A stretch of 64,000 bases of DNA from Styela clava. Lineage: Eukaryota. Below the pieces are notes generated by a model. That model was not told the origin of the DNA. It searched no databases and was given only the letters and a program-made list of their open reading frames with translations. Below, piece after piece: positions 1 to 42,900 of the stretch (position 1 is the stretch's first letter; each line of letters opens with the position of its first letter). A program made the translations under genes and the position numbers. The stretch covers positions 12,214,001 through 12,278,000 of the forward strand of contig NC_135251.1 of NCBI RefSeq assembly GCF_964204865.1, in the 5' to 3' direction.

Positions 1-968
1 GTCCACGCGGCGTCGCTACGTCGTCCCTGGAAACTGACTTCGGCCTCTCAATTGAATTTAACGGAAGAAAAGTCAGAATTGTCATCCCGTCATATTATAT
101 GTCAAAGGTATGTTGTTTTTGCAATCTTAAGCATAAAACACGTATTGTTATGGATATCAATATAAATACTTTTATGTATATACACTCTATATAAGGTGAT
201 TTGATTTGTGGATAGCTCTTGAAAAATTGGTTGTATCTTACTAATGTCGACTCTACCAAATAGAACTGCATTGGTGCGTTGGACATTTTCTTGCCGGTGT
301 GATTATATCATTGTTCAAGCATTGCTCGTGTCCGGGGCTGTGAACTGGTAATCGGACTTAAAAAAATTGACATAATCGTGAAATCGAGGTCTCATACTTA
401 AACTCCACCGGAATTTCGCAGTTGGAATATGAGACATTCTATGATGATAATCGAAGTCAGGATTCCCAACAGAAACTAAAAACTGTCAAGTTACTTGAAA
501 ATGTTCAAGAAACAAATTAAAACCCACTGCATATGCCGACGACTTTGTCAACAAAATTTGGTTTTCTCGAGTTAAAATTTAAAGCCGGAGTCAAACTTGA
601 GTTGAGACCTTGTTTCAGAGTTCAAATTGTTAACCAGGAATCGGAAGTTGTTTTATAAATCACTTAAAGTTTGGGAGTCGCGTCAGAAAAAAATATTTGC
701 AACCCACAGCCCCGCTCGTAACTAATAATGAGTGGTAATTCTAACAATATGATTCATGTAAGTAAAATGCCAAAATTGAGCATTTCTTCATTCAGATGAA
801 CGGTTTATGTGGAAACTTCAATGGAATTGGAACTGATGATTTTGTTACTTCTTCGGGTCTATCAACCACGGACATCAATGAATTCGGAGACAGTTACAGA
901 CTCGACACATGCACAGCTTCAACAACAACTACAGCGTTTACTTGCTCTCCCAAATTCGCCGCAAAATG
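1..968 (+). CDS. Exons <1-107 and 796-968: C-terminal part of a VWD (von Willebrand factor type D) domain
   Basis: Spliced translation PRGVATSSLETDFGLSIEFNGRKVRIVIPSYYMSK|MNGLCGNFNGIGTDDFVTSSGLSTTDINEFGDSYRL. Donor GTATGT at 108, acceptor TTCAG ending 795, donor GTAATT at 969. Confidence 0.9.
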
Positions 969-18900: not shown

Positions 18901-21900
18901 GGCTAATGTCCCTTTTATATATTATGTGGTGGCTTTCTAATCAGAGGTGGAAATTACTGTACCTATTGATATTATTTATTTCTAGAACTCAAAAAACATT
19001 ATTACTGCAATTTCATCTACTTCAATTTACTCATCTATTCTATAGTTTAGTGACTCTCTATTAAGTTTAGAATTTTAAGTAAATTTATTCATCAAATGGT
19101 AGATTCTATTTTCAAGATGAAGTATGACTCAAAATTAAATCTTTCGATTTATTCTAGGCATGGTATCAAAACTTGACATGAGTACTGATATGATGACTGT
19201 ATTAAGTGAACAAAATTTTGAGGAAGTGAAAAAGGTTTGGGATCACGGGATCAAAGAAACTAAAATGAGTGACAAAGAAATCAACAAAGTACTATCGTGT
19301 GAGTATTACTAGAATTTACAAGTGTAACAATATAGGAATAAATTATTTGTGGTGAACTGTGAAATCATATCTTGTTCCATTATATAACAAGTGACAATTT
19401 GCTAATTATATTTGCAATGATAATAAGATAATATTTTCTTTCTATGATAAGGTATAGATTATTGATTTACATTTTTATGATTTACAGTACCGGGTATGGA
19501 TACAGCTAAAGTTGAAAAAATGAGTGAAGCTATTGCAATGCCAGAGGTTGTTGAAGTTCCTGTTATTTTCGATACAAAAATTGCTGTCCAAAGTAAGTAT
19601 ATTTGTTAGCGATCTTTTTTAAATATGCGAGTCATTGTCAATTACTGTGACCAAGTCAAATTTTAAGTTGCTTTTTCCATGAATTATGCCTTCATAATTA
19701 AATTATTTAAACACTATTAATTGATTAATTTTATACCTCGCCGTTTTTTTCACGTGAATTTCAGGATTTTTTTAGCACTGAGGCAGAAAAGTACTTTCCG
19801 AGAGATAAATTTTACAAATATATATGTATTTATTTTTACTTATCATATACTTATACTGTCATTAAGAAGCTGTTTTTATGGTGTAGATTGTAGAATCTAG
19901 AATCTAGATGATTACAGTGATACATGTATTACAGAGAAAGCAATAAAAGCTGCTATGGAAATTAAGATTGAAGAATTAGCAGCAAAGCGAGAACTTTCGA
20001 TGCAGGAAGCAAAAGACAAAAAGGACAAGTGCAACAAAATTAAAAGCAACAACGGACAATCTGAGGCATCCAAAACAAATTATGGTTATCTCAAAGGATT
20101 TGAAAAAATTTGTGATCTTATTGATGGTGAGATAAAAAATGAAGCATCCCATACTAATACTTGATTTAAGCAATTCCAGTGCTATTCAACATTCTTAATG
20201 GAAAAAGTATGTGAATACCAATTGAATGAAACATTTGTTTACTGGTTAATAATACCTTTGCAATTTAAAAATAACTTGAAACACAACAACTTTAACTTCG
20301 CTGTATAAGTTTATTGTGACTCCCAATGATTTAGTGAACATTTTCATTTTTTTTTCTGAATGCCGGTGAATATTTTAAGTTTTTTCAAATTTTGTTGTAC
20401 ATCTTAAATTTCAATGTGGAGAATTTCACTATGCTAGCTTTTATGCCCCTCTTCACCTTACTGAAATCCGTCATTGTGAATATTCTACTTTGCATTTTCG
20501 ACACAGAATCAAGCTATGAAATGTCAACAGAAACAACCAAACAAGTCGAACATGAAATAAAAAATACAGTTATGAAGCTTGAAAATAGTCGTAATAGAGG
20601 AGGTAATGCTATAAACTACATAAAAAATTAATTATGTCTAGACTCATTCATGACAAAATGAACGTGAAAATTGTAAAATAAGCAGAGAAATATGGTACTT
20701 ATTAAAAGTAGATGATGGTACTATGTTTTCGACATGCAATGAACATACAATCGTGGCAAATTTGTGAAAGTAAATATGCGCAAATCTGCTACGATTCTTT
20801 TTAATTTTTTTTCAATTTTTTCTTTCATGAAAATGTATCATAGCGTCATAACGTCATTCCAGTGTAGTTTTAATAGAATTGATGTACTATAGAAAATCAT
20901 TTGATTGTAATTACATTTTCAAAACAACAGTCAGTGTAATAATGGAATTATAGTCCAGTGTTTTTGTTTGATAATATTCAAGCGTAAAATATTTTATTTC
21001 TATTCTCACATATTTTTTTACAGATTTAGAAGCAGCTGAAAAAGCTAACAGCAGACTTCGAGCTGTGACAGAATTCATGCAAACTGCAGAGCAAGCTGTA
21101 AACATAGCATATGAATCTCTTGAAGATGGACCAGCAGGTTTAAATATAATTTGTTTTCATTTTTATAAATCAAAGATTTTATTAAGACTTGATTTTGAAT
21201 TTGTGGAGTGTAAACAAATTCTTATATATTCAAAAGTTCAGCTAAGCAGTGAAATTTCATATTTTTACTCGAATATTAGTTTCAACTTCAATCAGTGAGT
21301 ATTTTATTTCATATACATAGAACTAACTCTACCTCGAGTGGAAATTTCGCCCCGTTGGTCTTGATTGAAATCTCTGTCTCCGACTTCAGCGAAGGTTAGA
21401 CATTGCATTGCATTAAATCATTAAATTTCCTAAAATGTTGTATACTAATAGGAGAAAAAGAACTCACAGAGATGGAGAAAAAACAAATAAAAGAAAACAT
21501 TGTGGAGCAAATAAAAGCAGAGAAAGAAAAATATGGTATTGAAGATGAAGCAGCAAAAGGTAATTGTAATAGAATGAAAAAGTATGAAACCGAATATTCC
21601 CATGAGTTTGCTTGTCATTTCGTAATGCAAATGTAATGCTCATATTTTTATTGAAAATGGCCCCGGATTTAAATTGAATAAAAGCCAGTGTTAGCTGCAA
21701 AATCAGATTATCAAAAGACATTTTACTCTCGGGGTGACTCAGTATTATATATAATTTACATTTAACAAAAAGCACTGATCAGCATTTAGGTAGCGTAGCT
21801 ATGGGTTTCCGCTCATATTGCGAAAAACGAAAGAATTTTCCTAACCTTTGTTCTCTGTTTATACATTCTCTTATTTCAGAGCTTGCAAAGAATATAGATG

Positions 21901-24900
21901 CTTCTATAAAAACTGTATCCGTTGTTCTTCAACGTCGAACAATTGCTTCTAAACAGGAAAATCTTGAAGAATTGAAAACTGCATTCAAAGATAAACTTCA
22001 GAAAAATTCCAAGAATTCGGAGAGTAAGTATTATGCGAATGTGGTGCAAATTTTTTTTTGGATAAAGAGGTATAATAATATAATATTACATTATAACAAA
22101 ATTCGGGTGCTCCAGAAGTACGCGCACCAAGATGTCGCACAACCTGAATCTTTAACGGTACACACATACTATGTTCAGGTTGTGCGCCATCTTGGTGCGC
22201 ATACTTCTGGAGGTTCAAAATTCGATTACAATTTCCAAATTGCCATACCTTCTTATTTTTCTAACCTTAACCCTTTTATTCAATTACCAAAGAAAGATAT
22301 TTAAAACACTCAATTTTTATTGAAGAAAAATGTGGATTGAAGGAATTGAAATGTTCTCATGATTGTGATAAATTTCTACAAGTTTGCATCTGTTTTGGTG
22401 GGATGGTTTTATCTAATGATAAGTCAACATGCATAGTACCAGAAGGTGAGCTATTATGTATCTTGTGACATTTCACAAATTTGAAACTTCAAGATTTCTT
22501 GGATTGTGTAGCAAATTTAGTATATTTGCTTATCCACACACGAATTCAGTATTCTTACACCTGCCTTTCATGTCAAATCAATCAATTTTATTTTGGTCGC
22601 TTTGGAATGAAACAAGATAGCATAACAATAACATAAAGACAAACAAAATTAATTTCAGAACCATCTGGTACTGATCTCTCTTCTCTTCCCACCGATGTTG
22701 TACACGCTGTACTTCTTTATCAGCAAGAAAAAATTGAACTTCAAAATCTGAAAAAAAATATTCCGGAAAAAATATCTGATCAAGAAAAGGCAGTCGAAGG
22801 TATGTAACTTTGTGAGCTTACCTCTTGAATATATGATTGCGTAAATATTCATCATCAACTGAATTAATAGAAAAAATTACGTAAAAATATTGCTAAAAAT
22901 ACTGAAAAATTGTAAAAATCATTATTTTAGATGTTTTGAAATCTGCTGAAAAACAGGGCATAAAGCCTGATAATATTGTTCGTGCTATTGTTAGTAAAGA
23001 ACTTGATAGAGCGAGCAGTGGAATTACAGACGACAAAGATGTTGTGACAACGGCACAAACTTTGCAAGAAGCAGTGGCGGTTAAGAAAATAATGGATAAA
23101 TCGAAGACTTTTGATGAACTTTTGACAATGATAAAAAGTACCGATGGTAAAGTTAATAAATCGTTTGGATTATTACTCTGTAAATATTGCTAGGTATATC
23201 AATCTAATATTATTGTTTCATCTAAAATTCTGCAGACGATGAGGAAAAAGATGATTCAGTCAATGTCGCAAAATTGTTTACATACATTGCGGAGTCGAAA
23301 GTAGACAGAACATTGCAAAAAATGAAGGAACAAATCACAGAAAGTATGGAACAATTTTTTATTTTAATTTTTTGTTTTATTTAGGTCAACTTCGTGTTCA
23401 GTTTTTATATTATTAGGTTGCTGAGCGGAAATATTTGTAAACCACTTATTTTAGATCTTCTTAGAGTCAGGAAGACTATATGCTAATTGATCTTCATTGC
23501 TAATGTATTCTTTTATATCCCTCCTAATAGCATAGAGTTTTTTATTTATTGGGCACATTTAACACTGTTATTGAATTTACATCGAACAGTGATAAAACTA
23601 GTTTATTTAATTTACTTTTTCGCTGGTATTTAATTTCTGAGGTACTGTATCGTATGGTTCAGTGTTTCTTGCCATTTTCTGTACACTATATGTAGATCGC
23701 ATTTCCAAAATAAAATCAAGGTTTCGCTTCAATTGCATTTACCATATCAAACGTTTAATAAATCACTCGAATTTTTTTTTTTATACTTATCATCATTTTA
23801 GTGCCAATTGAGGATACTTCATCTAGTTTTAAAATTATGAGGAATGTCATCAAGATAAGCAAAATGGCTGAAGAATCAAAGCATTCTGTGACAAAATCAC
23901 TGGATGAAATTCCAGAATCTGACGAAGGTGATTTATTCGATTTTCACATTGCTTTAGAGCCAGCCTCGCATCCTTTTTTATTGTCAATATTATTAGTTGT
24001 TTAGTCATTTTGTTTGACAAACTGTGTTCTATGTTTCTTTGTCTGATGGTGTATACTATAAATATTACATGTTTTACCGAGTTATGTAGCGTATGTAGAA
24101 TTCCCTTTTTTACTGTTAGAATTAGCAACGCCTCGTTAGCAAGGCCTCGTCCTAGTGTTGAGTATATATGTTAGTTTTATATTTATTTCACACTGAAAGA
24201 ATTGTTTAATCCTGGATTTCCTGATGTGCTTTTATATCAAAACTTCGTAATTCTTTGTGGCTGTGTAAATGGAAGTTATTCAATTACACAATCATGCTAT
24301 GCTTCGTTCGTGTCAAATGGTCTAATGACAAAGCATAAACCGTGGGCTTTTATTAGATGATTCAAGCTTGAAAAGGGAAAATGATAACGAAAAAGAAAAT
24401 AATATTGAACTTGAGATTGCTCCCAAAACAACTGAAACACCAGCGCCTGTCTTTAAGTTGGAGGTTGCAACTCCAGTAAACAAGAAAGGTATGATGGTGT
24501 CATTTGATAAAAATCGCTTAATGTGAATAATGATTCGAAATAAATAGTTCGTTAAATTTCTTATCATCAACAAATAACTGAGACTGCAAAATAATGACAG
24601 CTATAGTGAACTTTAACGTACTCATAGTTCATCATATTTCATTGTATTGCTAATGCGGTGAAATCGGAATATGTGCGGCACCAGATTTTAAATATATTGG
24701 AAATAATGTTATTTAAGACAACACAAAACGTTATATCCAGAAAATTTGTCTAAATACAAAATTATTGTATTTTTTGAAGAATTGGAAATTAAGGAAGAAC
24801 TTTTGGAAATCAAAAAAACGCCAAAAGAAAATTCAGGTATGTAATACATTATTATGTAATTTTATTCATTATTGTTCTATATGTTCAATAATGTTAAAGA

Positions 24901-27900: not shown

Positions 27901-30900
27901 TGTTTAACTAATTGAAGATGAAGTTTTTCACGCCAACGCTGATGCTTATAATTGGAGTTCGATTACCATACAAAGAAATGCACTGATTGGCATGTTGGTT
28001 CTATTCTATTCACACACTAAATGCTTATCCGCATTTGTTTAGGATAGTTTGACTTTATTGTTTAGATCTGTTGATGAATAGACGGATAACTTGGTATACT
28101 TGGTCAATTGTAATACGTCGTCGAATCATATACATAATTCGTTACAAACTAAATCGATTTCGAATATTGATAAAAATGAGAATTTTGATGTATGCAAGAA
28201 GATTTGAAAGTAAGTGAACTTTACCACATAAATTGTTGTAAAAACTATTGCATATACTGCAGATACTATTGTCCACAATAACCGGGAAAAGACTGAATTC
28301 CTGAAAAACAGATTTGTTTTCAAAGATAGCGCAAAATGAATATGCGTAATATTAAAATTCATTCTGTTAGAGCTGCTGATCAATGGACCATGGTATTTAC
28401 ATTCATGTCTTCAACATTCTTTGGATATCTTAATCTAATGCCATTTCCAGTATTTTTATTATACCTTCTTTATAGTTTCTTTAATGACTTTCGTCAATTT
28501 TTTTGGTCAAAGTTATTCACACATACTTTTATTTCGTCGATTCAGAAAAATGTGGATTGCCCGCATTGGGTTGCAGTCATGATTGCGATCTTTCGTCAGA
28601 GAAATGCATATGCTCTGCTGGTATGACTTTAGGTGGAATAGGAGGCAAAACTTGTGTATGGAATGAAGGTAATAATCAGTTATTCGATGTAGAATAATGC
28701 ATAATTCTTTGGACACAAAGATTTCCAAATATTAATTAGTATAGCCTACTTATGCAGGTATATAATCTTTTTCAACTAAACCTTCATTTTCCTTAACCTG
28801 GTACAATTTGTACGATTGAACAGAACATATTTTTTTATTATGTACTCGGCAGATTCATTTTTGAAAAATTTTAGTCCTCAAAATATCAATTTTTCTAGTT
28901 GAGGCGTCAATGGTAGTGTTAACATATTTGCATTATTTCTATTATCACAAAGATTTTGATAATAAACTTGGCTTTATTCTAGATTTCATTGAAAATGGTG
29001 ATCTTCCGCTGACTCCAGAATTTGCATACATAGTTCGGTTATTGATTTTCTACAGACAAGAGTTGATGCTAGTTAGCACAATGGAAGAAATTGTTCCATT
29101 GGAAAAAACTGAAAGTGAGAAGGAGGCCGATGGTATGTATATATACTGCATTCAAATTACATGTTATGTAGTTAGCCGTGATAAAATGATATCATATCAT
29201 ATCAAGTGGGTCATTTTCTGTTTTATGTTTTCAAATTGTGTTTAAGTATTTGTTCAAAAATTTTTTTTTTGAAAATGATGAACACAAACCAACAAATTTT
29301 AGATTTAATAAGACAATGAATTAAAATGTTATGCTCAGAAACGCCTTGTTTTGGTTGAAACAAAGAATACTTTGTTCTACCTTAACCTTAAGCCTTATTG
29401 TGTTTAGATGCATTGAAGCAATTTGAAAACAAAGACAAAAATCTCGAACATGTTCTTCTGATGATTCTTGAGAATTACAGAAAGGATCAATTCATTGGAA
29501 AAGATTTAGACTCTCCGGATGCAATGCAAGATAAAATTACAGTTGCACAGGCTATATCATACCAAGAAATAATTTCGCTTGAGAAATTAATACAAAACAC
29601 TCAAGAAATAGACAAGATATTAGACGAGGTTGAAGGTAAAAGTGAAGGTATGACAATATACAGATTTTTATGATTGTCTATTATCTATATGAATCGACTA
29701 ATATGCACTATGCACTGAATTTATCAGTATGAGTGAATTCAATGCTATTGGTCAATAGTGAATGATACAAACGAATTTTTTTTTTAAATGTATTTATATT
29801 TTTCATATATATCATAATTGTCATGCTTCACATTATTAATCTTTGAAATACATGATTAAAATAAATGTTTATTATAATAGCTGACACACAAAAAGTTTCA
29901 ATCAATGAAAAGCTTTTGGAAGTCACAGCCAAATCAAGACTGATGATGGCCATGCAGAAAATCAAATCACAACTCGGGAAACGTGATGGTGAGAGATAAA
30001 AATATTTCTTTTAATAATTTTGAAATTAATTTTTTAAATATGAACCTTCGATAAATATATAGTATTAATGCACATGATTTTCAATTTGGCCCTTAATTCA
30101 AAAAGGATGCAATCATGAATAGAAACAATGTAAATACAGATGTTTTCTAAAGTGTACAGGGTGGTAGCTAAGAAAATAGAAAATTTGTCAAACAGCTATT
30201 CATTTTTACAAATGATGATTTGAAAACGAGCAAGTTAATCTTCAAAATGCCGCACGAGCTTAGACTTCTAGGTTAAGACACTGCTCGGAAGTCTACGGAC
30301 AACGTTTTGAGAATCTATGAGTATAATATAACATATGACTTTAAAATCGTGGAGAAGATTGTTCTTTGTAAGAAGTAAATACTGTTTGACAAATTTTCTG
30401 TTTTCTGGCGACCACCATGTATATATAGGAATGTAAACACATGTGCAATATATTCGAAGCAATAGGAAGTTTTGGGTTAGTTTACGACTAATTGGATTTA
30501 TTATTTGAATAGATGTACAAGAAGAAGATGATTCAAATTATCAAGTTTTGAATGCAATTGTTGAGGTTAATAGGAAACTGAAAGAACTAAAAGAAACAAC
30601 TGATTATGAAAGATCCAAATCGAAGGATGACGAAGATAGCCCCAAGACGGAGGGTGGCAAAGATAGCCCCAAGACGAAGGATGGCGAAGATAGCCCCAAG
30701 ACGGAGGATGGCGAAGATAGCCCCAAGACGAAGAATGGCGCAGATAGCCCCAAGACGGAGGGTGGCAAAGATAGCCCCAAGACAAAGGATGGCGAAGATA
30801 GCCCCAAGACGAAGGGTGGCAAAGATAGCCCCAAGACGAAGGATGGCGAAGATAGCCCCAAGACGAAGGATGGTGAAGATAGCCCTAAGAAGGAGGATGG

Positions 30901-33900
30901 CGAAGATAGTCCCAAGACGAAGGATGGCGAAGATAGCCCTAAGACGAAGGATGGCGAAGATAGCCCCAAGACGAAGGATGGCGAAGATAGCCCCAAGAAG
31001 AAGGATGGCGAAGATAGCCCTAAGACAAAGGATGGCGAAGATAGCCCCAAGACGAAGGATGGCAAAGATAGCCCCAAGACGAAGGATGGCAAAGATAGCC
31101 CCAAGACGAAGGGTGGCGAAGATAGCCCTAAGACGAAGGATGGCGAAGATAGCCCCAAGACGAAGGATGGCGAAGATAGCCCCAAGAAGAAGGATGGCGA
31201 AGATAGCCCCAAGACGAAGGATGGCGAAGATAGCCCCAGGACGAAGGATGGCGAAGATAGCCCCAAGACGAAGGATGGCGAAGATAGCCCTAAGACGAAG
31301 GATGGCGAAGATAGCCCCAAGACGAAGGATGGCGAAGATAGCCCCAAGACGAAGGATGGCGAAGATAGCCCCAAGACGAAGGATGGCGAAGATAGCCCCA
31401 AGACGAAGGATGGCGAAGATAGTCCCAAGACGAAGGATGGCGAAGATAGCCCCAGGACGAAGGATGGCGAAGATAGCCCCAAGACGAAGGATGGCGAAGA
31501 TAGCCCTAAGACGAAGGATGGCGAAGATAGCCCCAATACGAAGGATGGCGAAGATAGCCCCAAGACGAAGGATGGCGAAGATAGCCCCAAGACGAAGGAT
31601 GGCGAAGATAGCCCTAAGACGAAGGATGGCGAAGATAGCCCCAAGACGAAGGATGGCGAAGATAGCCCCAAGACGAAGGATGGCGAAGATAGCCCCAAGA
31701 CGAAGGATGGCGAAGATAGCCCTAAGACGAAGGATGGCGAAGATAGCCCCAAGACGAAGGATGGCGAAGATAGCCCCAAGACGAAGGATGGCGAAGATAG
31801 CCCTAAGACGAAGGATGGCGAAGATAGCCCCAAGACGAAGGATGGCGAAGATAGCCCCAAGACGAAGGATGGCGAAGATAGCCCTAAGACGAAGGATGGC
31901 GAAGATAGCCCTAAGACGAAGGATGGCGAAGATAGCCCCAAGACGAAGGGTGGCAAAGATAGCCCCAAGACGAAGGATGGCGAAGATAGCCCCAAGACGA
32001 AGGGTGGCGAAGATAGCCCCAAGACGAAGGATGGCGAAGATAGCCCCAAGACGAAGGATGTCGAAGATAGCCCCAAGACGAAGGATGGCGAAGATAGCCC
32101 CAAGACGAAGGATGGCGAAGATAGCCCCAAGACGGAGGATGGCGAAGATAGCCCCAAGACGAAGGATGGCGAAGATAGCCCCAAGACGAAGGATGGCGAA
32201 GATAGCCCCAAGACGAGGGATGGCGAAGATAGTCCTAAGACGAAGGATGGCGAAGATAGTCCTAAGACGAAAGATGGCGAAGATAGCCCCAAGACGACGG
32301 ATGGCGAAGATAGCCCCAAGACGAAGGATGGCGAAGATAGCCCCAAGACGAAGGATGGCGAAGATAGCCCCAAGACGAAGGATGGCGAAGATAGCCCCAA
32401 GACAAAGGATGGCGAAGATAGCCCCAAGACAAAGGATGGCGAAGATAGCCCCAAGACGACGGATGGCGAAGATAGCCCCAAGACGACGGATGGCGAAGAT
32501 AGCCCCAAGACGAAGGATGGCGAAGATAGCCCCAAGACGAAGGATGGCGAAGATAGCCCCAAGACGAAGGATGGCGAAGATAGCCCCAAGACGAAGGGTG
32601 GCGAAGATAGCCCCAAGACGAAGGATGGCGAAGATAGCCCCAAGACGAAGGATGGCGAAGATAGTCCCAAGACGAAGGGTGGCAAAGATAGCCCCAAGAC
32701 AAAGGATGGCGAAGATAGCCCCAAGACGATGGATGGCGAAGATAGCCCCAAGACGAAGGATGGCGAAGATAGCCCCAAGACGAAGGATGGCGAAGATAGC
32801 CCCAAGACGAAAGATGGCGAAGATAGCCCCAAGACGAAGGATGGCGAAGATAGCCCCAAGACGAAGGATGGCGAAGATAGCCCCAAGACGAAGGATGGCG
32901 AAGATAGTCCCAAGACGAAGGGTGGCAAAGATAGCCCCAAGACGAAGGATGGCGAAGATAGCCCCAAGACGAAGGGTGGCAAAGATAGCCCTAAGACGAA
33001 GGATGGCGAAGATAGCCCCAAGACGAAGGATGGCGAAGATAGCCCCAAAACGAAGGATGGCGAAGATAGTCCCAAGACGAAGGGTGGCAAAGATAGCCCC
33101 AAGACGAAGGGTGGCAAAAATAGCCCCAAGACGAAGGATGGCGAAGATAGCCCCAAGACGAAGGATGGCGAAGATAGCCCCAAGACGAAGGATGGCGAAG
33201 ATAGTCCCAAGACGAAGGGTGGCGAAGATAGCCCCAAGACGAAGGATGGCGAAGATAGTCCCAAGACGAAGGGTGGCAAAGATAGCCCCAAGACGAAGGA
33301 TGGCGAAGATAGCCCCAAGACGAAGGATGGCGAAGATAGCCTCAAGACGAAGGATGGCGAAGATAGCCCCAAGACGAAGGATGGCGAAGATAGTCCCAAG
33401 ACGAAGGGTGGCAAAGATAGCCCCAAGACGAAGGATGGCGAAGATAGCCCCAAGACGAAGGATGGCGAAGATAGCCCCAAGACGAAGGATGGCGAAGATA
33501 GCCCCAAGACGAAGGATGGCGAAGATAGCCCCAAGACGAAGGATGGCGAAGATAGCCCCAAGACGAAGGATGGCGAAGATAGCCCCAAGACGAAGGATGG
33601 CGAAGATAGCCCCAAGACGAAGGATGGCGAAGATAGTCCCAAGACGAAGGGTGGCAAAGATAGCCCCAAGACGAAGGATGGCGAAGATAGCCCCAAGACG
33701 AAGGGTGGCAAAGATAGCCCCATGACGAAGGATGGCGAAGATAGCCCCAAGACAAAAGATGGCGAAGATAGCCCCAAGACGAAGGATGGAGAAGATAGCC
33801 CCAAGACGAAGGATGGCGAAGATAGTCCCAAGACGAAGGGTGGCAAAGATAGCCCCAAGACAAAGGATGGCGAAGATAGCCCCAAGACGACGGATGGCGA

Positions 33901-36900
33901 AGATAGCCCCAAGACGAAGGATGGCGAAGATAGCCCCAAGACGAAGGATGGCGAAGATAGCCCCAAGACGAAGGATGGCGAAGATAGCCCTAAGACGAAG
34001 GATGGCGAAGATAGCCCCAAGACGAAGGATGGCGAAGATAGCCCCAAGACGAAGGATGGCGAAGATAGCCCCAAGACGAAGGATGGCGAAGATAGCCCCA
34101 AGACGAAGGATGGCGAAGATAGCCCCAAGACGAAGGATGGCAAAGATAGCCCCAAGACGAAGGATGGCGAAGATAGCCCCAAGACGAAGGATGGCGAAGA
34201 TAGCCCCAAGACGAAGGATGGCGAAGATAGCCCCAAGACGAAGGATGGCGAAGATAGCCCCAAGACGAAGGATGGCGAAGATAGCCCCAAGACGAAGGAT
34301 GGCGAAGATAGCCCCAAGACGAAGGATGGCGAAGATAGCCCCAAGACGAAGGGTGGCAAAGATAGCCCCAAGACGAAGGATGGCGAAGATAGCCCCAAGA
34401 CGAAGGATGGCGAAGATAGCCCCAAGACGAAGGGTGGCAAAGATAGCCCCAAGACGAAGGATGGCGAAGATAGCCCCAAGACGAAGGATGGCGAAGATAG
34501 CCCCAAGACGAAGGATGGCGAAGATAGCCCCAAGACGAAGGATGGCGAAGATAGCCCCAAGACAAAGGATGGCGAAGATAGTCCCAAGACGAAGGATGGC
34601 GAAGATAGCCCCAAGACGAAGGATGGCGAAGATAGTCCCAAGACGAAGGATGGCGAAGATAGCCCCAAGACGAAGGATGGCGAAGATAGCCCCAAGACGA
34701 AGGATGGCGAAGATAGTCCCAAGACGAAGGGTGACAAAGATAGCCCCAAGACGAAGGATGGCGAAGATAGCCCCAAGACGAGGGATGGCGAAGATAGCCC
34801 CAAGACGAAGGATGGCGAAGATAGCCTCAAAACGAAGGGTGGCAAAGATAGCCCCAAGACGAAGGATGGCGAAGATAGCCCCAAGACGGAGGGTGGCAAA
34901 GATAGCCCCAACACGAAGGATGGCGAAGAAAGCCCCAAGACGAAGGATGGCGAAGATAGCCCCAAGACAAAGTATGACAAAGATAGCCCCAAGACGAAGG
35001 ATGGCGAAGATAGCCCCAAGACGAAGAATGGCGAAGATAGCCCCAAGACGGAGGGTGACAAAGATAGCCCTAAGACGAAGGGTGGCAAAGATAGTCCCAA
35101 GACGAAGGATGGCGAAGATAGTCCCAAGACAAAGAATGGCGAAGATAGCCCCAAGACGAAGGATGGCGAAGATAGCCCCAAGACGAAGAGTGGCAAAGAT
35201 AGCCCCAAAACGGAGGATGGCGAAGATAGCCCCAAGACGAAGGATGGCGAAGATAGCCCCAAGACGAAGAGTGGCAAAGATAGCCCCAAGACGGAGGATG
35301 GCGAAGATAGCCCCAAGACGAAGGATGGAAAAGATAGCCCCAAGACGAAGGATGGCGAAGATAGTCCCAAGACGAAGGGTGGCAAAGATAGCCCCAAGAC
35401 GATGGGTGGCAAAGATATCCCCAAACCAAAGGATGGCGAAGATAGCCCCAAGACGAAGGATGGCGAAGATAGCCCCAAGACGAAGGATGGCGAAAATAGT
35501 CCCAAATCAAGAAGAGTTGAATATAATGAAGATGAAAAACATCTCAAAGAAAATGAACGTGGTGACGGAAGTGGAGATAGCCGATGTAAGCCCAATTCAT
35601 CTTAAAATATGTTTATTTGGTATACAATCCATTCTATGTATTTGTTTTTAAATGATATCTTCTTAGCAATTGAGAGATCACAAAACACGATCCTTCCAAT
35701 TAAAACACTGTTTTTTTGGCGGGGATGATTGTTATCGTTTGCATTAAAGTAACGTAATACTAATATCTAATAGATAATTACTGAGATTAAAATTAATATT
35801 AAATGTTCAGTTTGCTCCATACATGTATTTGTTTAGTTATAATTAGTTCTGATATATTTGAGAAATTTTATTTTGAATGTTTAGATGAGAACGCAAAGTA
35901 TGAAAAATCACCCGATCAACTTTTATATGAGATTGAAAAATCATTAGAAGATGATAAAGGTAAATTATATGCTATCAGTAGAATTAATTTTCCTTTTGCA
36001 ATTTGTACCTTTAACATATAAGAAACTGCCTTCTTACTAACATATCTTACTTGTTTTGATGATAGAGTGTGAAATAGTTCCTAATACATACATACTTTGT
36101 ACGAACTTTGTTAAGGTAATAAATAACACATATTCGGGGTAATATTTATTACTTTTGTCGATAATAGATTCTACTTTCTCTAAGAGTAACTCGGTGCATT
36201 TAAAAATAACAACAAGGTTTTTTCACGCATAGAAAATGATTTGAAACTTGAGCAGTTAAAGGAGTTGCTGCTAGAAGAAATGAAGGATCAATTCAAAAAG
36301 CAAAATGTCGCGTTAGCTGAGAGAGCAGAGCATGCAATGAGATGTGGACACACAAAACAGGATAATCATGAAAATGCAAATGTGGTTCATCCAGAAGGAT
36401 CTTGTAAAATCAAAGGTATTTTAGTGTGATCGATCATGTGTGATATTAGGGAAACTGTTCTATTTTTTGTGAATACATTTAAAAAGTGTAGGATCGACTG
36501 ACTATGGAAAAAAGCAAAACTTGTGACTTCTTTATTTATAATCACTTTCTAACGGGCACTGCTCTTGTTTTAAGTATAAATCTAGAATAGAAACAGCCTG
36601 CTTATATATTTTAGAAATCAGTTTAGTGTAAATAGAAATTAAAAGATTTAAATGGATTTGTATATGATTGTAAAGTCTAAATAAATTTCCATATCAAAAG
36701 CCAAAATTTTTTAATTACCCAACAGAAAAAGACTTTGCTATACTAGAAGAAGCAGACAAACAAGTTGAAACAGTGATGAAAGAAGCATATAAAGCATTGG
36801 AGTTCGGCAATAACAAGAAAGAAGGTTTGAGATTTATTCACAAATATCACAATATAAGAAAAAAATATTATAAGTATTTATATTTCCTGTATACTAGACC

Positions 36901-39900
36901 TCAAGAAGATGTTACTTTTGAAAAAGAAGTTAGAATCAGTGTCTGAGATTTTCAATGCTGCTGATGACATTGAGACAATGGCATTTGGGTCAAACAAAAC
37001 TATCTCTGGTAAATAATTTTTTCTGTTCAGTATTTTTTCATTGTTTCTTGAGTTTTTTTTTTCAGGTTGTCAAACACTGATTTATGAATATTTGAGCATT
37101 TTTCATTATTTATGATTGCATATTACTCGAGGTAATGTCATATAAATTCATAACAATGCGATTGTTACTATTGTTTTGTTAATATTCCGTTATTGGACAT
37201 ATAGCATTCTCTAATTTCCGACAATTTAATATGCTGTGTATTTCATTAGCAGATGTAATGGACCAAATAAAAACTAGTATACTAGAAGAGATACCTGACC
37301 ATCACTTGGAGGCTTCAAATATAGATGTATTGAGAGGTAAGTGAGATATGAAAAAAGTATAGACTACATATCGAATGAAATGGCTGCTTATACTTACATG
37401 AAGTAAAATACATATATTCGTACATCATCCATAAAATACCTGCCTACCTTTCGATCTTTTCCATAAAACATTTATTTGGCATTTTTGTTATGAATCGAAT
37501 ATTTACTATGGATCTATTATAGCTCTATTGTTGAGGACAAAAATAACTTGGTATACATGGACAATTGTTATACGTCGACGATTCATTTATATCTTTCGGT
37601 ATAAACTTCAAGAATTTAGAATGATAATAAAAATGAAGATTTTGATTTATGCAAACACATTTAAAGGTAAGTTTACTTACGTACATAAAATATTTTATTT
37701 GAAAGCATCACTGATAGTAAATTTGTTTAAAGGAAATTGTAAAATATCCGAATTTGGATGCAGTCATGACTGCGATATTTTGTCAAAAAAATGCATCTGT
37801 CCGCATGGAATGAAACTTGACTCGGAGACAAAAACGTGCCAATGGAACGAAGGTATTTTATTTTATCTATATATTAATTTGTTTTAATTGCTGTTAACCG
37901 TTTCTTCATTACTATAATATACATCTATAAAAATGGTGCAGCAAATCATTCTCTATTAGCATGCGTGTGTATTTTGATTTTTTTTCAGACTTTATAGCTG
38001 AAGGGGAACTTACAGATCTTCATCAAGATATTGTTCGTTTGATACTATTATACAGACAAGAGTATATGTTAATGAAGACTGTAGCCGAAATGATTCCTGA
38101 AGATAAATCTCCAGAAGAAGAAACTGCAGAAGGTGCAAATTGTTAAAATGTTGAAATTTAAAACAATTTGCAATTTCGCAATTTTATTCATTGTTATACA
38201 TCAATATGAATGGCTTTTTAAAAAAGCTTTTCAAAATAGATAAATTTTCTGATGGTCATGAAATAAGTTTTTTGTATTACGGTAGACATGATGCAATTGG
38301 TTGTTTTTATTATAACCTGTATTACTTTATTGGATAAGCTTGAATATGAATATATTAGTTTTCTACTTCATTTAAGAATTATTTGATGCATTGGTTTTGT
38401 TTATAGTAACCTTCCATGGCTTATTCTAATTTTTTTTTTACTTCACTCTAGATAATGTTACGCGCAGTCCAATGGAGTTTCTTTCAATCGTCCATAAAAA
38501 CAAATTATGACAATATAAAATACCAAAACAACATTAGTAGGACTACACCAAATACTAATAACTATTTCTGTACTTTTTCCCCGAATTATCCCAGGAGTTT
38601 TAAAAGATGCTGAAAATGAATGGAATGGTAAAGAAGATATACTTGAAGTCATTGTTAAAAATAAGCAAAATGAATTGAAAAAAGAACTGAAGGAAGTTAA
38701 ATCTCCGTCTGACGAGGAACTTTTCAAGAAAAGCAAAGCCTTACAAGAAACAATTAATCTTCTCAAACGAATTAAAAAATCTGATGAGTTGAATAAAATA
38801 ATCAAAATGGCTAAAGATACAGGTGAGCGTAAAATGATAATTATTCAGACAGAATCGTCTGAATTATTAGCTGGTGACCTTCTAATTAAATGTCAGTGTT
38901 AATCTTTGCACTGCATTTTGACATATCTTTATCATTTGATTAACTAAGGAAAACGGATTGTATATTTGAAAAAAATAATGAGCATGTCAATGAAAAATAT
39001 TTCTAATTATCAATGCAGCAGCTTCACTGTTTGTCAATCGATCGAAAGAAAAATTAATATATTTTAATTAAATAGGCAAAGATAATGACAGTTCCATGTC
39101 TGCAGAGATACTGACTTTGACAGCAAAGGCAAGAATGGATACTGTGATGCAAAGACTTGAAAAAGAGTTGACAGGTAAGCAATTATTTATTGAAAACAAC
39201 CTGAAATTTTACTTATTTTAATATACCGATATCTGTTTATTTCAGACTCAAATTTAGAGGAATCACCGGAATCTCAATACAATATTTTGTACTCATTAAC
39301 AAAAGCGACCAAGGAATTTAAAGAATTGAATGAAATTCCAAGCAAAGATATGAATGTTGGAGATGGTATGTGTGTATATGTTCCATACATAAATCAGCAA
39401 ACAACAAACAACTATTTTTTTTTTAATTCCAATTTTTAGATGAAAAAGTGAAAGAAGATATATCAAATATTTCAGCAAATATTGAGTATGAAAAAAGCAA
39501 AGAGCTTTTGGATGAAATTGACAAAATTTCTTTCGGAGATGTTGAAGGTTTGCTCAATGGCATCTTCCTAAAAATTAATGCAGTCCTTCAAAACAATCAT
39601 GTTCGATTCAACCAATCGACATTCTTCAAACACCCATTTTTTAATGAAGCTGCTTTAATAATTTCAGACAAAGAGCAAATTTTAGGAAAAATAAAAGAAA
39701 AATTAGAACGTGACATCGAAGAAAAGATGCAGAAACATGAGCTTGAGGTTGCAGAAAAAAAAGAAAAAAGAGAAAAATGTAAAAAGGAGAATCCGGCCGG
39801 AAAAGAAAATGAAAAATCACCTCACGAAAACTGTGGGGAAGAAAGTGGTAAAAATAATAGTTCAAAGGATAAACTTGTTTTTACTGAAAAACCCAATTTG

Positions 39901-42900
39901 ATAAATAATAAAAAATTGAAAGCAAGTTGTACTATATGGGCTTACCTGAATTAGTTACAAAAAGACAATAATTTGATGACAACATTTGCAAGAAAGTTAT
40001 TTATCATTTCACTGCGCTCATGACAATTTTTATACAACTATTAATAATTTCAATTTTTCAGATACAAACAAGCAGGTGGAAGAAGCAATGAAAAATGTTT
40101 ATGAGAAGTTGAAAAAAGCAAAGACTGAAGGAGGTATGAATTTTATATAATTTAATTACAAAAGAATAGAAAAAACCCTAATTGCATAATATTTCAATTT
40201 AGATTTAAAGACTGCTGCTCTTAAACATGCCGAACTAACAGCTGTGGCTAAGTTTGTAGGAAAAGTTGATAAAATTTTGGAATCTGAACAAGACACAGAA
40301 AAAGGTCAGTTTCTGTTTAATATGTTAAAAATTTCGTAGTTTTTAATACTTTTCATTAAACAATTATACAAAATTGTATATTGTTTCCTTAGACAAAATT
40401 ATAATGAGCCCATCCGACAAAGAAGAAATGAGAAACAAACTAGTTGAAGAAATGAAAAATATCGGCATCGTACCAGTCGTTGAAAACAAAGCTGTAATGG
40501 GTAAGTTGGTCAGTGATTAAGTTTTCAAATTATATGTTTTTTCATACTAAAAGTTACATTTTCGACTGAAATAGATGCTGTGAAGCATATTGAGGTGCCG
40601 ACCGAAACGTTGAAGAACATTTTACAACGCAAAGTCGTTAAAGATATTACACAAAGACTTGTTGAACTTGACGAAATTATCGGAAAGAAAGTTTTAAAAC
40701 ATGCGAAATCAAGTGGGAGTAAGTACAAGTTTAATGGAATATATTTATACAAAATAGTGAGAATTAGAAAAATAACATTTGTTTCCGCACCAACAGAAAA
40801 ATGCTCAATATCGGAATTAAAGTGCAGTCACGATTGCAACAAACTGACCAAGAAATGTATTTGCTACGAGGGAATGACTCTTGTTAACGGAATACAATGT
40901 GTATTGAAGAAAAGTAATATATAATTTTCCTTTTTGAAATCTTATTACTTTGCTTTAACTTTTGTTAGTGGTTGATTCAATATTACTATTCCTATTTATT
41001 GATACATGCATAATTCTAGATATCCACTATGTATTTATTTTTTAATAGGATTTTTAAATTCGGTAAAATTTAATACCTTTTTTTTTCTCTCAGACATTAC
41101 AGATGGAACGGATGTCTCTAAATTCCCTCAAGAGATATCTCTTTCTTTAATGCTACGGAAGGAAAATAAAGAATATCTTTCAGTAATAAAAAATAATACT
41201 CAAGCACTAAAATCTGATGATGAAAAGAATGTGGAAGGTAATTTATTGTCATATCAGATATCTAATTAAGGTAATATTAATTATAATAACTTTGATTAAC
41301 TCATTCAGAAACATTAGCAAGTTTAGAAAAGAAGGGATTACCCTTGGATGATCTAATTACTGCCCTCGCACATAAAAAGAAACTTGAAGTGACGAAGGTT
41401 TATGAAGCTGATTCTGACGATGGTGAAACCGAAGATCAAACATACAACAAAGAATATGAAGTATTGAAAAGAGCAAAGGAATATCAAGAAGCTGATTCTT
41501 TACAGAAATTATCAATGAAACGCAAATCATTTGAAAAACTTCTTGATGCAATGAAAGAAACGGATAAAGGTAATATTAAAATGCCAATTTTGCATATCTG
41601 TCTTGAATTAGTAAATAGATATACATGGTACAATTTATTAAACTTTTTTTGTTTCTTGCAGATGAAACAACACTTGACGATAATGAGGATAAAAACACTC
41701 TGTTGGTGCTAAAATATATTGCGGAAACAAAAGTTGATAAGAAGGTTGAAGAATTGACTCAAGCACTGAAAAATAGTGAGTAATTTTTTATCTTTTCTTC
41801 AAAAAAATTCGTTTTTGAAAACAATTGTGACAATAATATTTTTTTTTATTAGATTCTGACGTCTCGTCGAGTCTAAAACTTCTGGATAATCTGGGAAAAA
41901 TTAAAAAGTTGAAAAAAGATTCTGAAGAAGAAATTGATTTGATAATTAAATTTGAGGAAAAAGTGAAGAATAAGGGTGAGGGTAGAATTTTATTCATCAT
42001 GTGCGGCATTTTGTTAATATAGTTGACTCTACACATATAAGCAACAAATGACTATTTAATGAACTATAATTATAATAAGGTATTTTTATTTTTTATTGTT
42101 CATTGAATATTTTTCACGGGGATTTTATTTTTATGTTGAATCATCTTTATTTGTAAGATTGTAATGCTAATTTCAACTCGAAAGTATAGTCTGTAAATAT
42201 TGTTTTTTACCACAATTACTCAATTCTGTTATTTGTTTTCCAGAAGATCTTCCCATTGAAGAAGTTGATAATCTGGATGAAAAATCTGAAACCAAAAATC
42301 TTGAAAAATATTCTAAAGACATAATTGCTGAAATTGCGGAAGTGGAAGGTCAAAATCCAAAAGGTGAAATAATATTCGAGAACAATAACTTCAATTTGAT
42401 ATTTGATTTTGTTTGATAATATTTTTATTTTCTGTTTAAAACATGAAAAATACAATATGACCAATCGTTTTGTGATAAAAAAAAACTTATTAAGACTGAT
42501 TAGTTTTATAACGACTTCTGCCTCACAATAATCTGCGGAGGTTCTACAATCCTTTTTGCTCGATTGTATTCTTGTATTATGATATTTGTTGTTACAGTGT
42601 GAAAACACATTTCAGCACGTCAGATTACTTCAACCAGTTCCTTGAATTCAATATTTGTTTTTCAGAGAAAGAACAAAAACTCAAAGAAATAAAAGAAAAA
42701 TTGGAACGTGACATCGAGGAAAAGATGGAAGAACAAGAGGCTGCAGTTGCAGAAAAGAAGGAAAAGCTTGAAAAATGTAAAAAAGAAAACCCTGCTGGAA
42801 AAGGAAATGGAAAATCTCCTCACGAAAGATGTGGAGATGAAAGTGGTAAACACATACAATGGATTATGTCGTCGGAATACAATTTTTTTCTTGCAAAAAA

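What the first reader, a model, noticed from the sequence alone, without database searches (positions are those of the whole stretch)
37523..37666. Second conserved cationic-aromatic exon; the pair brackets the giant repeat module
Seen: ALLLRTKITWYTWTIVIRRRFIYIFRYKLQEFRMIIKMKILIYANTFK (net about +10). It shares ITWYTW.IVIRRR.IYI.RYKL..FR..IKM.IL.YA..F with copy 1, while the neighbouring introns show no evident similarity and most neighbouring helical exons are much more diverged. This points to purifying selection on the odd sequence. The two copies lie on either side of the 1,630-aa KTKDGEDSP tract. Inference: a sticker-spacer design, with two cationic/aromatic stickers around a long charged disordered spacer, as in phase-separating or adhesive proteins.
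Basis: partly seen in the sequence, partly recalled or inferred. Interest (0 to 1): 0.75.

Follow-up and report, generated by a model that had tools for sequence, protein, structure and literature searches.

The report
Conserved greasy, basic helix exon pair
This stretch is a real, spliced coding exon of a giant, uncharacterised sea-squirt matrix protein: an unusually greasy and positively charged version of a helix found in every repeat unit, kept by selection in two neighbouring units, with its role still untested.

Summary
Observation confirmed. Window 37523-37666 is a 144-nt, phase-1/phase-1 exon. A spliced contig joins it at GT..AG borders to both neighbours, and it sits in two Styela clava RefSeq models of uncharacterised LOC120335993.

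It is the counterpart of the helix exon before the EGF exon in each of 14 repeat modules. In sister modules A and B, core hydrophobic positions and about 11 basic residues are kept. Acidic and polar positions became Ile/Tyr/Trp/Phe, giving net +12 and +10.

It is the most conserved of nine A/B exon pairs: 66% identity against 28-56%. Synonymous divergence is as high as elsewhere, so selection fits better than recent gene conversion. There are two copies in the genome and no relative in 1.84 billion proteins.

The bracketing is true by coordinates, but it follows from module order. The KTKDGEDSP array is a young expansion inside module A's ninth exon. The copies lie roughly 210-245 residues from it.

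Sticker-spacer phase separation is untested; a non-covalent binding patch is my inference. The scan noted the sister copy on this window before (s1-815934).

The parts
37523..37666 (+). E4 of module B: the 144-nt, phase 1/1 cationic-aromatic exon (the finding)
   Evidence: GT..AG joints 37336|37523 and 37666|37733 in an X1 contig. Exact in RefSeq model P0002 at residues 248-294. Only open frame of six.
28066..28209 (+). E4 of module A: the sister copy, same length and phase
   Evidence: Acceptor ttag|ATCTGT and donor TTGAAA|gtaagt. 31 of 47 residues identical to copy B. Profile hit E 3.8e-26 in the own genome. No RNA check of this copy was made here.
37250..37336 (+). E3 of module B, the exon spliced onto the 5' side of E4
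   Evidence: Donor at 37336 joined to 37523. Peptide exact in P0002.
37733..37852 (+). E5 of module B: EGF-like exon with six Cys
   Evidence: Joints 37666|37733 and 37852|37989. Cys pattern found. Pfam FXa_inhibition 23.4 bits, below the 33.4 cut-off.
37989..38132 (+). E6 of module B: acidic helix exon after the EGF (net -8)
   Evidence: 45% identical to module A's E6.
28546..28668 (+). E5 of module A: EGF-like exon
   Evidence: 56% identical to B's E5.
30513..35585 (+). E9 of module A: 5073-nt exon holding the 27-nt x 180.9 array (30621-35505)
   Evidence: Phase-1 acceptor and donor. TRF: 94% matches, 0 indels. Its head aligns to B's E9 with score 51 against a shuffle maximum of 45, 0 of 2000 reaching it. 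Net charge -118. Its tail is spliced to E10 in P0001 and P0002.
35885..35959 (+). E10 of module A, linking the repeat exon to module B
   Evidence: Peptide exact in P0002 at residue 63.
36233..36415 (+). E0 of module B (followed by E1 36726-36824 and E2 36898-37008)
   Evidence: All exact and in order in P0002.
37667..37696 (+). First 30 intron bases after the E4 donor, partly conserved with copy A (28210-28239)
   Evidence: 21 of 30 match, 6 of them GTAAGT. Random intron 30-mers give mean 9.0, maximum 18 in 5000 draws.
40575..40718 (+). Canonical E4 of the first 3.06-kb cassette (six more at 43639, 46710, 49775, 52837, 55897 and 58962)
   Evidence: Same 144 nt and phase. Net +4, no aromatic residue.
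21880..22023 (+). Canonical E4 of the module at 22 kb
   Evidence: 144 nt, phase 1/1.
61547..61690 (+). Canonical E4 of the module at 62 kb
   Evidence: 144 nt, phase 1/1.

Best explanation
SHOWN. Window 37523-37666 is an expressed, spliced coding exon (E4 of module B) of a very large modular protein of Styela clava. RefSeq holds pieces of it as uncharacterised LOC120335993. The protein has a VWD-C8-TIL part at the window's start and at least 14 modules of about 11 short exons, helix-type by composition, each with one EGF-like exon. E4 is the exon just before the EGF exon. It has the same length (144 nt) and phase in modules m22, A, B, the seven cassettes and m62. In the adjacent sister modules A and B, 13 of the 16 positions that are hydrophobic in ordinary E4 exons stayed hydrophobic. 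The basic residues were kept (11-13 against 10-12 in m22, cas1 and m62). The acidic residues (5-6 down to 1) and polar residues (12-14 down to 4-5) at the other 31 positions were replaced by Ile, Tyr, Trp, Phe and Met. Since the old A/B duplication this has been the slowest-changing exon of the module. INFERRED (about 0.4 on its own). The helix keeps its place in the module scaffold, but its formerly polar face is now a greasy, arginine/lysine-lined patch that no partner exon visibly compensates. It most likely acts as a non-covalent binding patch: self-association, or binding of polyanions such as the protein's own net -118 repeat tract or sulfated or cellulosic matrix. Functionally this recalls the CysD domains that cross-link mucin gels between glycosylated tracts. 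The 'bracket' around the KTKDGEDSP array is a by-product of module order and a later in-exon expansion.
For: Splicing: three GT..AG joints at the exact borders in one contig. 12 of 12 module-B exon peptides are exact and in order in P0002. Module homology rests on 14 EGF exons and equal exon length and phase. A profile of six ordinary E4 exons scores B 10.5 bits (0 of 2000 shuffles reach it) and A 6.3 bits (6 of 2000). Re-surfacing: core 13 of 16 hydrophobic; surface hydrophobic 14 against 0-3, basic 11-12 against 10-11, acidic 1 against 5-6. Selection: identity 66% against 28-56%; dN 0.22 is the lowest of nine exon pairs. The random-change simulation gives P 0.001-0.003. A-B identity is 18 of 31 even at surface positions. 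Sister modules: A and B are mutual best matches for E4 (66 against <=28), E5 (55 against <=51) and E6 (43 against <=32). Outlier status: among the 40 printed of 60 exon blocks of P0002, E4(B) has hydrophobic fraction 0.55 against <=0.39, net +10 against -9 to +5, and 10 aromatics against 0-5. VWD scores 25.5 bits and C8 39 bits, both above cut-off. The CysD role is taken from the abstract of PMC3195396.
Against: No fold is known. AlphaFold2 on P0001 without an alignment gave mean pLDDT 44 and pTM 0.29; E4 came out as helix 247-282 at pLDDT about 43-49. So 'exposed face' is argued from composition only. The gained residues (Ile, Tyr, Trp, Thr, Phe) also favour strands (general knowledge). There is no binding, expression-site or orthologue evidence. 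Only one spliced contig was seen, at depth 3.9, so exon skipping, which would keep the frame, is not excluded. The junction from module A into the repeat exon rests on splice phase and homology, not RNA. A secretion signal was not looked for; it lies outside the window.
Confidence: 0.55

Rival explanations
1. Purely structural helix. In modules A and B the E4 helix is buried in a module-specific core, or between the two modules. It is conserved for folding only, with no outward binding role.
For: Core pattern kept at 13 of 16 positions. Same length, phase and place as ordinary E4. Buried segments evolve slowly, which fits the lowest dN. E6 of A and B is somewhat greasy: hydrophobic fraction 0.37 in B.
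Against: No other A/B exon shows a matching gain. All printed P0002 exon blocks other than E4(B) have hydrophobic fraction <=0.39 and 0-5 aromatics. 11-13 Arg/Lys in 47 residues with a single acidic partner are hard to bury.
Confidence: 0.25
2. Two cationic-aromatic stickers were selected to flank a disordered charged spacer, so that the protein phase-separates or adheres.
For: Both copies are conserved and lie on either side of the array. The array is a Pro-containing polyampholyte with net -118 over 1690 residues, opposite in sign to E4 at +10 and +12.
Against: Only two such segments exist in the genome. They sit roughly 210-245 residues from the array, inside ordered-looking modules. Bracketing follows from A/B adjacency plus an in-exon expansion of E9. 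Array units are 94% alike while A/B synonymous sites are near saturation, so the odd exon long predates the present array.
Confidence: 0.12
3. The A/B similarity is due to gene conversion of a ~175-bp tract rather than selection on the peptide.
For: The DNA match runs 31 bases into the 3' intron. NG86 pS of E4 (0.47) is lower than in most other exons (0.53-0.86). The one E4 polymorphism between P0001 and P0002 (I/M) matches copy A's residue.
Against: At identical residues, codons differ as often in E4 (11 of 28) as elsewhere (58 of 119), p 0.41. Differences are skewed to third positions, 10/7/18. There are fewer amino-acid changes than random placement gives. The 5' end of the match coincides with the acceptor, as expected for exon constraint.
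Confidence: 0.07
4. Not coding: a chance open frame, a transposon piece or a non-coding RNA inside an intron.
For: AT-rich sequence. No Pfam family for the peptide.
Against: Spliced in frame to both neighbours. Present in two RefSeq models. Only two genomic copies. No Rfam match in the exon: the two matches at E 0.74 and 0.91 lie elsewhere. The codon-position pattern also argues against it.
Confidence: 0.01

Closest known systems
The ordinary pre-EGF helix exon (E4) of the same gene's modules (for example window 40575-40718, 21880-22023, 61547-61690)
   Same: Same position before the EGF exon, same 144 nt and phase 1/1. Shared core pattern, including Thr at exon residue 11, a basic RR/RK motif at residues 17-19 and Leu at residue 28. 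Profile match.
   Different: Net +10/+12 against -2 to +6. 8-10 aromatic residues against 0-2. One acidic residue against 5-8. Only 14-28% identical to ordinary E4 exons, but 66% between the two copies.
RefSeq XP_039259537.1 and XP_077975306.1, 'uncharacterized protein LOC120335993' of Styela clava (P0001, P0002)
   Same: They contain this exon. P0002 is letter for letter as in the window; P0001 has one I/M difference.
   Different: Both are partial models. They start at an internal Met in the repeat exon's tail and run into introns at their ends. They carry no function, and no paper holds the locus name.
CysD domains of gel-forming mucins such as MUC2 (abstract of PMC3195396 read)
   Same: A small non-repeat element beside a huge repeat tract in a VWD-bearing secreted protein. 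It contains a WxxW motif. The proposed role is non-covalent cross-linking.
   Different: CysD has five disulfide bonds, while E4 has no Cys. E4 is one helix-type exon of a larger module, about 210-245 residues from the tract. No sequence relation was found.
Cationic-aromatic adhesive and coacervate proteins (mussel foot proteins, sandcastle-worm cement) and sticker-spacer condensate proteins (recalled, no call)
   Same: A combination of Arg/Lys with Tyr/Trp/Phe next to highly charged low-complexity sequence.
   Different: Those carry many stickers spread along disordered chains. Here there are two segments inside ordered-looking modules. No homology was tested or claimed.

Membership tests
E4 (pre-EGF helix) exon family of this gene | Lies between the E3-type exon and the EGF-like exon of a module | tested here: met
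   Joints; exon order in P0002.
E4 (pre-EGF helix) exon family of this gene | 144 nt, phase 1 at both ends | tested here: met
   Same in m22, A, B, seven cassettes and m62; 150, 138 and 147 nt in m6, m11 and m16.
E4 (pre-EGF helix) exon family of this gene | Sequence match to a profile of ordinary E4 exons, and a kept hydrophobic core | tested here: met
   B 10.5 bits (0 of 2000 shuffles) and A 6.3 bits (6 of 2000). 13 of 16 core positions hydrophobic. The match is modest.
Gel-forming mucin / VWF-type proteins | VWD-C8-TIL assembly | tested here: met
   VWD 25.5 bits (cut-off 22.9) and C8 39 bits (23.7). TIL 18.3 and 14.6 bits, below 24.5, on split exon pieces at window 766-3676.
Gel-forming mucin / VWF-type proteins | Central giant exon of Pro/Thr/Ser-rich tandem repeats | tested here: inconclusive
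   One 5073-nt exon with 180.9 x 27 nt. S+T+P are 550 of 1690 residues; K, D, E and G make up 1092. Glycosylation is unknown.
Gel-forming mucin / VWF-type proteins | C-terminal cystine-knot domain | tested here: inconclusive
   No long Cys-rich + strand open frame was seen by eye among frames of >=40-45 aa in the 30 kb after the window. No Pfam scan was made of them.
Mucin CysD domain | Ten cysteines forming five internal disulfide bonds (PMC3195396 abstract) | tested here: not met
   No Cys in either copy.
Mucin CysD domain | WxxW motif | tested here: met
   W-Y-T-W is invariant in both copies.
EGF-like domain (FXa_inhibition / cEGF), neighbouring exon | Six-cysteine pattern and a Pfam score above cut-off | tested here: inconclusive
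   Pattern present. FXa_inhibition 23.4 bits (<33.4) and cEGF 20.4 bits (<26.6) for the single exon. cEGF reaches 38.9 bits (>26.6) over the whole of P0002.
Sticker-spacer condensate protein | Many stickers spread along a disordered chain | tested here: not met
   Two copies only in the genome. Both lie in modules predicted helical, at low confidence.
Sticker-spacer condensate protein | Phase separation that depends on the stickers | not testable with these tools
   Needs recombinant protein.
C-mannosylation acceptor site | W-x-x-W/C motif (abstract of PMC8433626, seen in the listing) | tested here: met
   WYTW in both copies. Whether the Trp is modified cannot be tested here. In MUC2 CysD the predicted site was not modified.
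Excised cationic antimicrobial peptides of ascidian blood cells (styelins, clavanins; recalled) | Small precursor from which the peptide is cut out | tested here: not met
   This is an internal exon spliced in frame to both neighbours of a protein of >2681 residues. No processing evidence was sought beyond that.

The most novel reading that the evidence does not exclude
The two conserved cationic-aromatic E4 segments are a cysteine-free cross-linking device of a tunicate mucin-like gel protein. A scaffold helix was re-surfaced with Trp/Tyr/Ile and Arg/Lys. It then binds the protein's own acidic KTKDGEDSP tract in trans, or sulfated or cellulosic tunic matrix. It may also be modified at its WxxW or Tyr residues.
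Probability: 0.2. Interest if true: 0.6.

Novelty: new variant of a known kind. Interest (0 to 1): 0.3.

Why it matters
If the patch is a binding surface, this gene shows how a repeat module of an extracellular giant protein can gain a new interaction site. It would do so by re-surfacing one helix while keeping the scaffold. It would also be a cysteine-free counterpart of mucin CysD cross-links, of interest for tunicate matrix biology and for bio-inspired gels and adhesives. As it stands, this is a well-supported case of selection on an odd exon in an orphan, uncharacterised gene. It is useful for annotation: the RefSeq models are fragments of one larger gene. It is not yet a mechanism.

Tried and rejected
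1. Non-coding or chance frame: rejected by the spliced contig, the frame scan and Rfam.

2. Transposon: rejected. There are two genomic places by DNA and two by profile, the next hit being E 0.19.

3. Frameshifted or inverted derivative of the ordinary exon: rejected. It aligns in the same frame without gaps to the 47-residue ordinary exons.

4. Recent gene conversion: not supported, though not excluded.

5. Relatives in other species: blank. The profile of both copies against 1,835,955,588 representatives gave 1 hit, the species' own P0001. P0001 against proteins of 207-660 aa gave itself only, among 4126 candidates. P0002 residues 1-500 against proteins of 1475-4692 aa gave none of 8000 scored. 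Copy A's own protein was not returned either, so these libraries are incomplete even for this genome, and the blanks are weak.

6. Pfam on both E4 copies and a cassette E4: no family.

7. ESM Atlas on P0001 and on the exon: best scores 0.79 and 0.80, at the level shuffled proteins reach.

8. AlphaFold2 on P0001 without an alignment: pLDDT 44, too poor for packing or a fold search, so no fold search was run.

9. An alignment of P0001 with 28 single-exon translations, meant as input for a second fold: MAFFT piled the helical fragments onto one region. It was unusable and no second fold was run.

10. Literature. No paper holds 'LOC120335993'. A four-term search (Styela clava, von Willebrand, EGF, repeat) listed 5 papers, none on this gene by title or abstract. 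I read passages of PMC9953650 (endostyle transcriptome), which name other genes only.

11. I built and searched no joined spliced model of my own. Exons were analysed one by one, and whole-protein steps used RefSeq's own models as the tools returned them.
Full report
WHAT IS THERE. The window is AT-rich animal DNA, about 30% G+C outside the repeat exon. At 37523-37666 the + strand has tag|CTCTATTG...TTTAAAG|gtaagt. Of six frames only one is open, and the same is true of the sister copy at 28066-28209. Its first Ala is a split codon: G from the previous exon plus CT.

I laid Logan contigs of four coded runs on 35650-39450. One 324-nt contig of run X1 (depth 3.9) lies on 37295-37336, 37523-37666, 37733-37852 and 37989-38006. 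It has three GT..AG joints, and a second contig joins 39174|39246. The other three runs laid nothing. The run is only guessed to be RNA, but intron-less joints at canonical sites are what a transcript gives. The genome holds no processed copy: two places by DNA and two by profile.

GENE AND SPECIES. A profile of the two copies (A2) was searched against 1,835,955,588 representative proteins. It found one protein, P0001, with E 6.5e-24. P0001 is XP_039259537.1, 'uncharacterized protein LOC120335993' of Styela clava. Its cluster mate P0002 is XP_077975306.1, 2681 aa, of the same locus. All 12 module-B exon peptides that I had delimited from splice sites and phase occur exactly and in order in P0002.

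P0002 maps colinearly to window 35402-52598 in 60 blocks. Both models are fragments. They start at an internal Met in the tail of the repeat exon and end by reading into an intron. The window's start encodes VWD (25.5 bits) and C8 (39 bits), both above Pfam cut-offs, and TIL pieces below cut-off. The gene continues at least 9 kb past the window with another module. No paper holds the locus name.

MODULE ANATOMY. There are 14 EGF-like exons in the window. The exon before each EGF exon, here called E4, is 144 nt with phase 1 at both ends in m22, A, B, all seven 3.06-kb cassettes and m62. It is 150, 138 and 147 nt in m6, m11 and m16.

The 47-residue versions align without gaps. They share Thr at residue 11, a basic RR/RK motif at residues 17-19, Leu at residue 28 and a regular hydrophobic pattern. 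A profile of six ordinary E4 exons scores copy B 10.5 bits (0 of 2000 shuffles reach it) and copy A 6.3 bits (6 of 2000). So the finding is a diverged member of a helix-type exon present in every module.

WHAT CHANGED. Ordinary E4 exons have net charge -2 to +6, 0-2 aromatic residues and 5-8 acidic residues. Copies A and B have net +12 and +10, 8 and 10 aromatic residues, and one acidic residue each.

I split the 47 positions into 16 'core' positions (hydrophobic in at least 2 of the 3 ordinary 47-residue exons) and 31 others:
- Core: A and B keep 13 of 16 hydrophobic.
- Others, hydrophobic residues: 14, against 0-3 in ordinary exons.
- Others, basic residues: 11-12, against 10-11.
- Others, acidic residues: 1, against 5-6.
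- Others, polar residues: 4-5, against 12-14.

The positive charge therefore comes from losing acids, not from gaining bases. The novelty is a greasy, aromatic surface on an old helix. Among the 40 printed of P0002's 60 exon blocks, E4(B) stands alone. Its hydrophobic fraction is 0.55 against <=0.39, its net charge +10 against -9 to +5, and it has 10 aromatics against 0-5.

CONSERVATION. Identity over aligned residues:
- E0: 30%
- E1: 35%
- E2: 44%
- E3: 28%
- E4: 66% (31 of 47)
- E5 (EGF): 56%
- E6: 45%
- E7: 28%
- E8: 28%

dN is lowest in E4: 0.22, against 0.31 for the EGF exon and 0.51-0.86 for the rest. In E4, pN is 0.19, pS 0.47, and differences by codon position are 10/7/18. Alignments of the most diverged exons (E3, E7, E8) are uncertain, so their values are rough.

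At residues identical in both copies, the codon differs in 11 of 28 cases in E4 and in 58 of 119 in the other eight exons (Fisher p 0.41). So E4 is as old as its neighbours at silent sites, and recent gene conversion is not needed. Placing the 35 observed base differences at random gives 22.6-22.9+-2.2 amino-acid changes against 16 observed (P 0.001-0.003). It leaves no stop only 11% of the time. Surface positions are 18 of 31 identical between A and B, and core positions 13 of 16.

Introns do not align, except the first 30 bases after the donor: 21 of 30 match, 6 of them GTAAGT, against 9.0+-2.5 for random 30-mers. One conservative I/M difference in E4 separates P0001 from P0002. There are 6 differences in 374 aligned residues overall.

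THE BRACKET. A and B are each other's best match for E4, E5 and E6, so they are sister modules from a tandem duplication. The repeat exon (30513-35585, phase 1/1) begins with about 36 non-repeat residues. These align to module B's E9 exon with score 51, against shuffles of 23.8+-4.8 and a maximum of 45, with 0 of 2000 reaching it. The array is therefore an expansion inside module A's E9.

The array is 180.9 units of 27 nt, 94% alike, with no indels. Its product has K 379, D 336, G 206, S 188, T 182, P 180 and E 171, and net charge -118. Its 3' end is spliced to E10 and on into module B in both RefSeq models. Its 5' junction to module A rests on phase and homology only.

By my count from the exon tables, E4(A) ends about 245 residues before the array and E4(B) starts about 210 residues after it. 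The two odd exons flank the array because they belong to the two adjacent modules. The present homogeneous array is much younger, or is constantly homogenised, compared with the A/B split.

MECHANISM. Shown: a coding exon, homologous to the module's pre-EGF helix exon, re-surfaced and under purifying selection. Inferred: it forms a binding patch. The partner exons show no matching gain of hydrophobicity, and 11-13 basic side chains with one acid are hard to bury. I therefore favour an exposed greasy-basic face that self-associates or binds polyanions. Candidates are the protein's own acidic tract, or sulfated or cellulosic tunic matrix (the last from general knowledge of tunicates).

The closest functional analogue I could document is the CysD domain of MUC2. 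It sits between glycosylated repeat tracts, forms non-covalent dimers and carries a WxxW motif (abstract of PMC3195396). E4 has an invariant WYTW, which fits the W-x-x-W/C C-mannosylation consensus (abstract of PMC8433626 in the listing). But it has no cysteine, so it is not a CysD domain.

The structure could not be settled. AlphaFold2 without an alignment gave pLDDT 44, with E4 as helix 247-282. The gained residues also favour strands. Nothing here speaks to phase separation.

LIMITS. No related species could be examined (blank; the genome collection holds no tunicates). One spliced contig cannot show expression level or exclude exon skipping. Copy A was not checked by RNA here. I left out any joined spliced model of my own. 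Exons were handled one at a time, and whole-protein steps used RefSeq's models as returned.

Noticed in passing
window 37667-37696 and 28210-28239: The first 30 intron bases after the E4 donor match at 21 of 30 between the copies (6 are GTAAGT). Random intron 30-mers give 9.0+-2.5, with a maximum of 18 in 5000 draws. The upstream intron shows nothing. This could be a splicing signal or the edge of an old conversion tract.
   Followed up: partly
E4 exons: 11107-11244, 15819-15965, 21880-22023, 28066-28209, 37523-37666, 40575-40718, 61547-61690: A dibasic RR/RK motif sits at the same exon position (residues 17-19 in the 47-residue exons) in 7 of 8 module types; m6 lacks it. So the 'RRR' of the odd exon is ancestral. 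Its role (salt bridge or processing site) is unknown.
   Followed up: no
window 35402-52598: RefSeq model XP_077975306.1 (P0002) starts at an internal Met in the repeat exon's tail and ends by reading into an intron at 52598. XP_039259537.1 (P0001) ends reading into the intron after E6. The annotation cuts one larger gene into pieces.
   Followed up: partly
P0001 against P0002 (window 35402-38134): Six substitutions in 374 aligned residues, plus one 9-residue repeat-unit indel between the two RefSeq models. The only E4 difference (I/M at exon residue 41) gives P0001 the residue that copy A has.
   Followed up: partly
window about 22100-22260 and 26926-27105: Similar open-frame pieces (…LQKY.HQ…) lie in the introns before the EGF exon of module m22 and before E1 of module A. 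This is probably an interspersed repeat.
   Followed up: no
L009:4048-4314 and L009:5163-5351 (4-5.4 kb past the window's end): The gene goes on beyond the window with at least one more module: an ordinary E4-type frame and an EGF-like frame. The region 20-30 kb downstream (L010) looks non-genic or repeat-like. No long cysteine-rich frame was seen by eye in L009-L011.
   Followed up: partly
window 62113-62424: Right after the EGF exon of module m62 there are G+C-richer open frames on both strands, and no E6-type exon within 900 nt. This may be an insertion.
   Followed up: no
window 41569-41709 (and the same place in the other cassettes): The intron after cassette exon E7 reads through as …LELVNRYTWYNLLNFF…, which faintly recalls the LLMNRRITWYTW start of the odd exon. 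The own-genome profile search did not list it at E <= 10, so it is probably chance.
   Followed up: no
alignment A3: In the failed fragment alignment, MAFFT stacked ordinary E4 and E6 peptides (both about 47 residues) on one another. They may be distant internal duplicates, or just similar helices.
   Followed up: no
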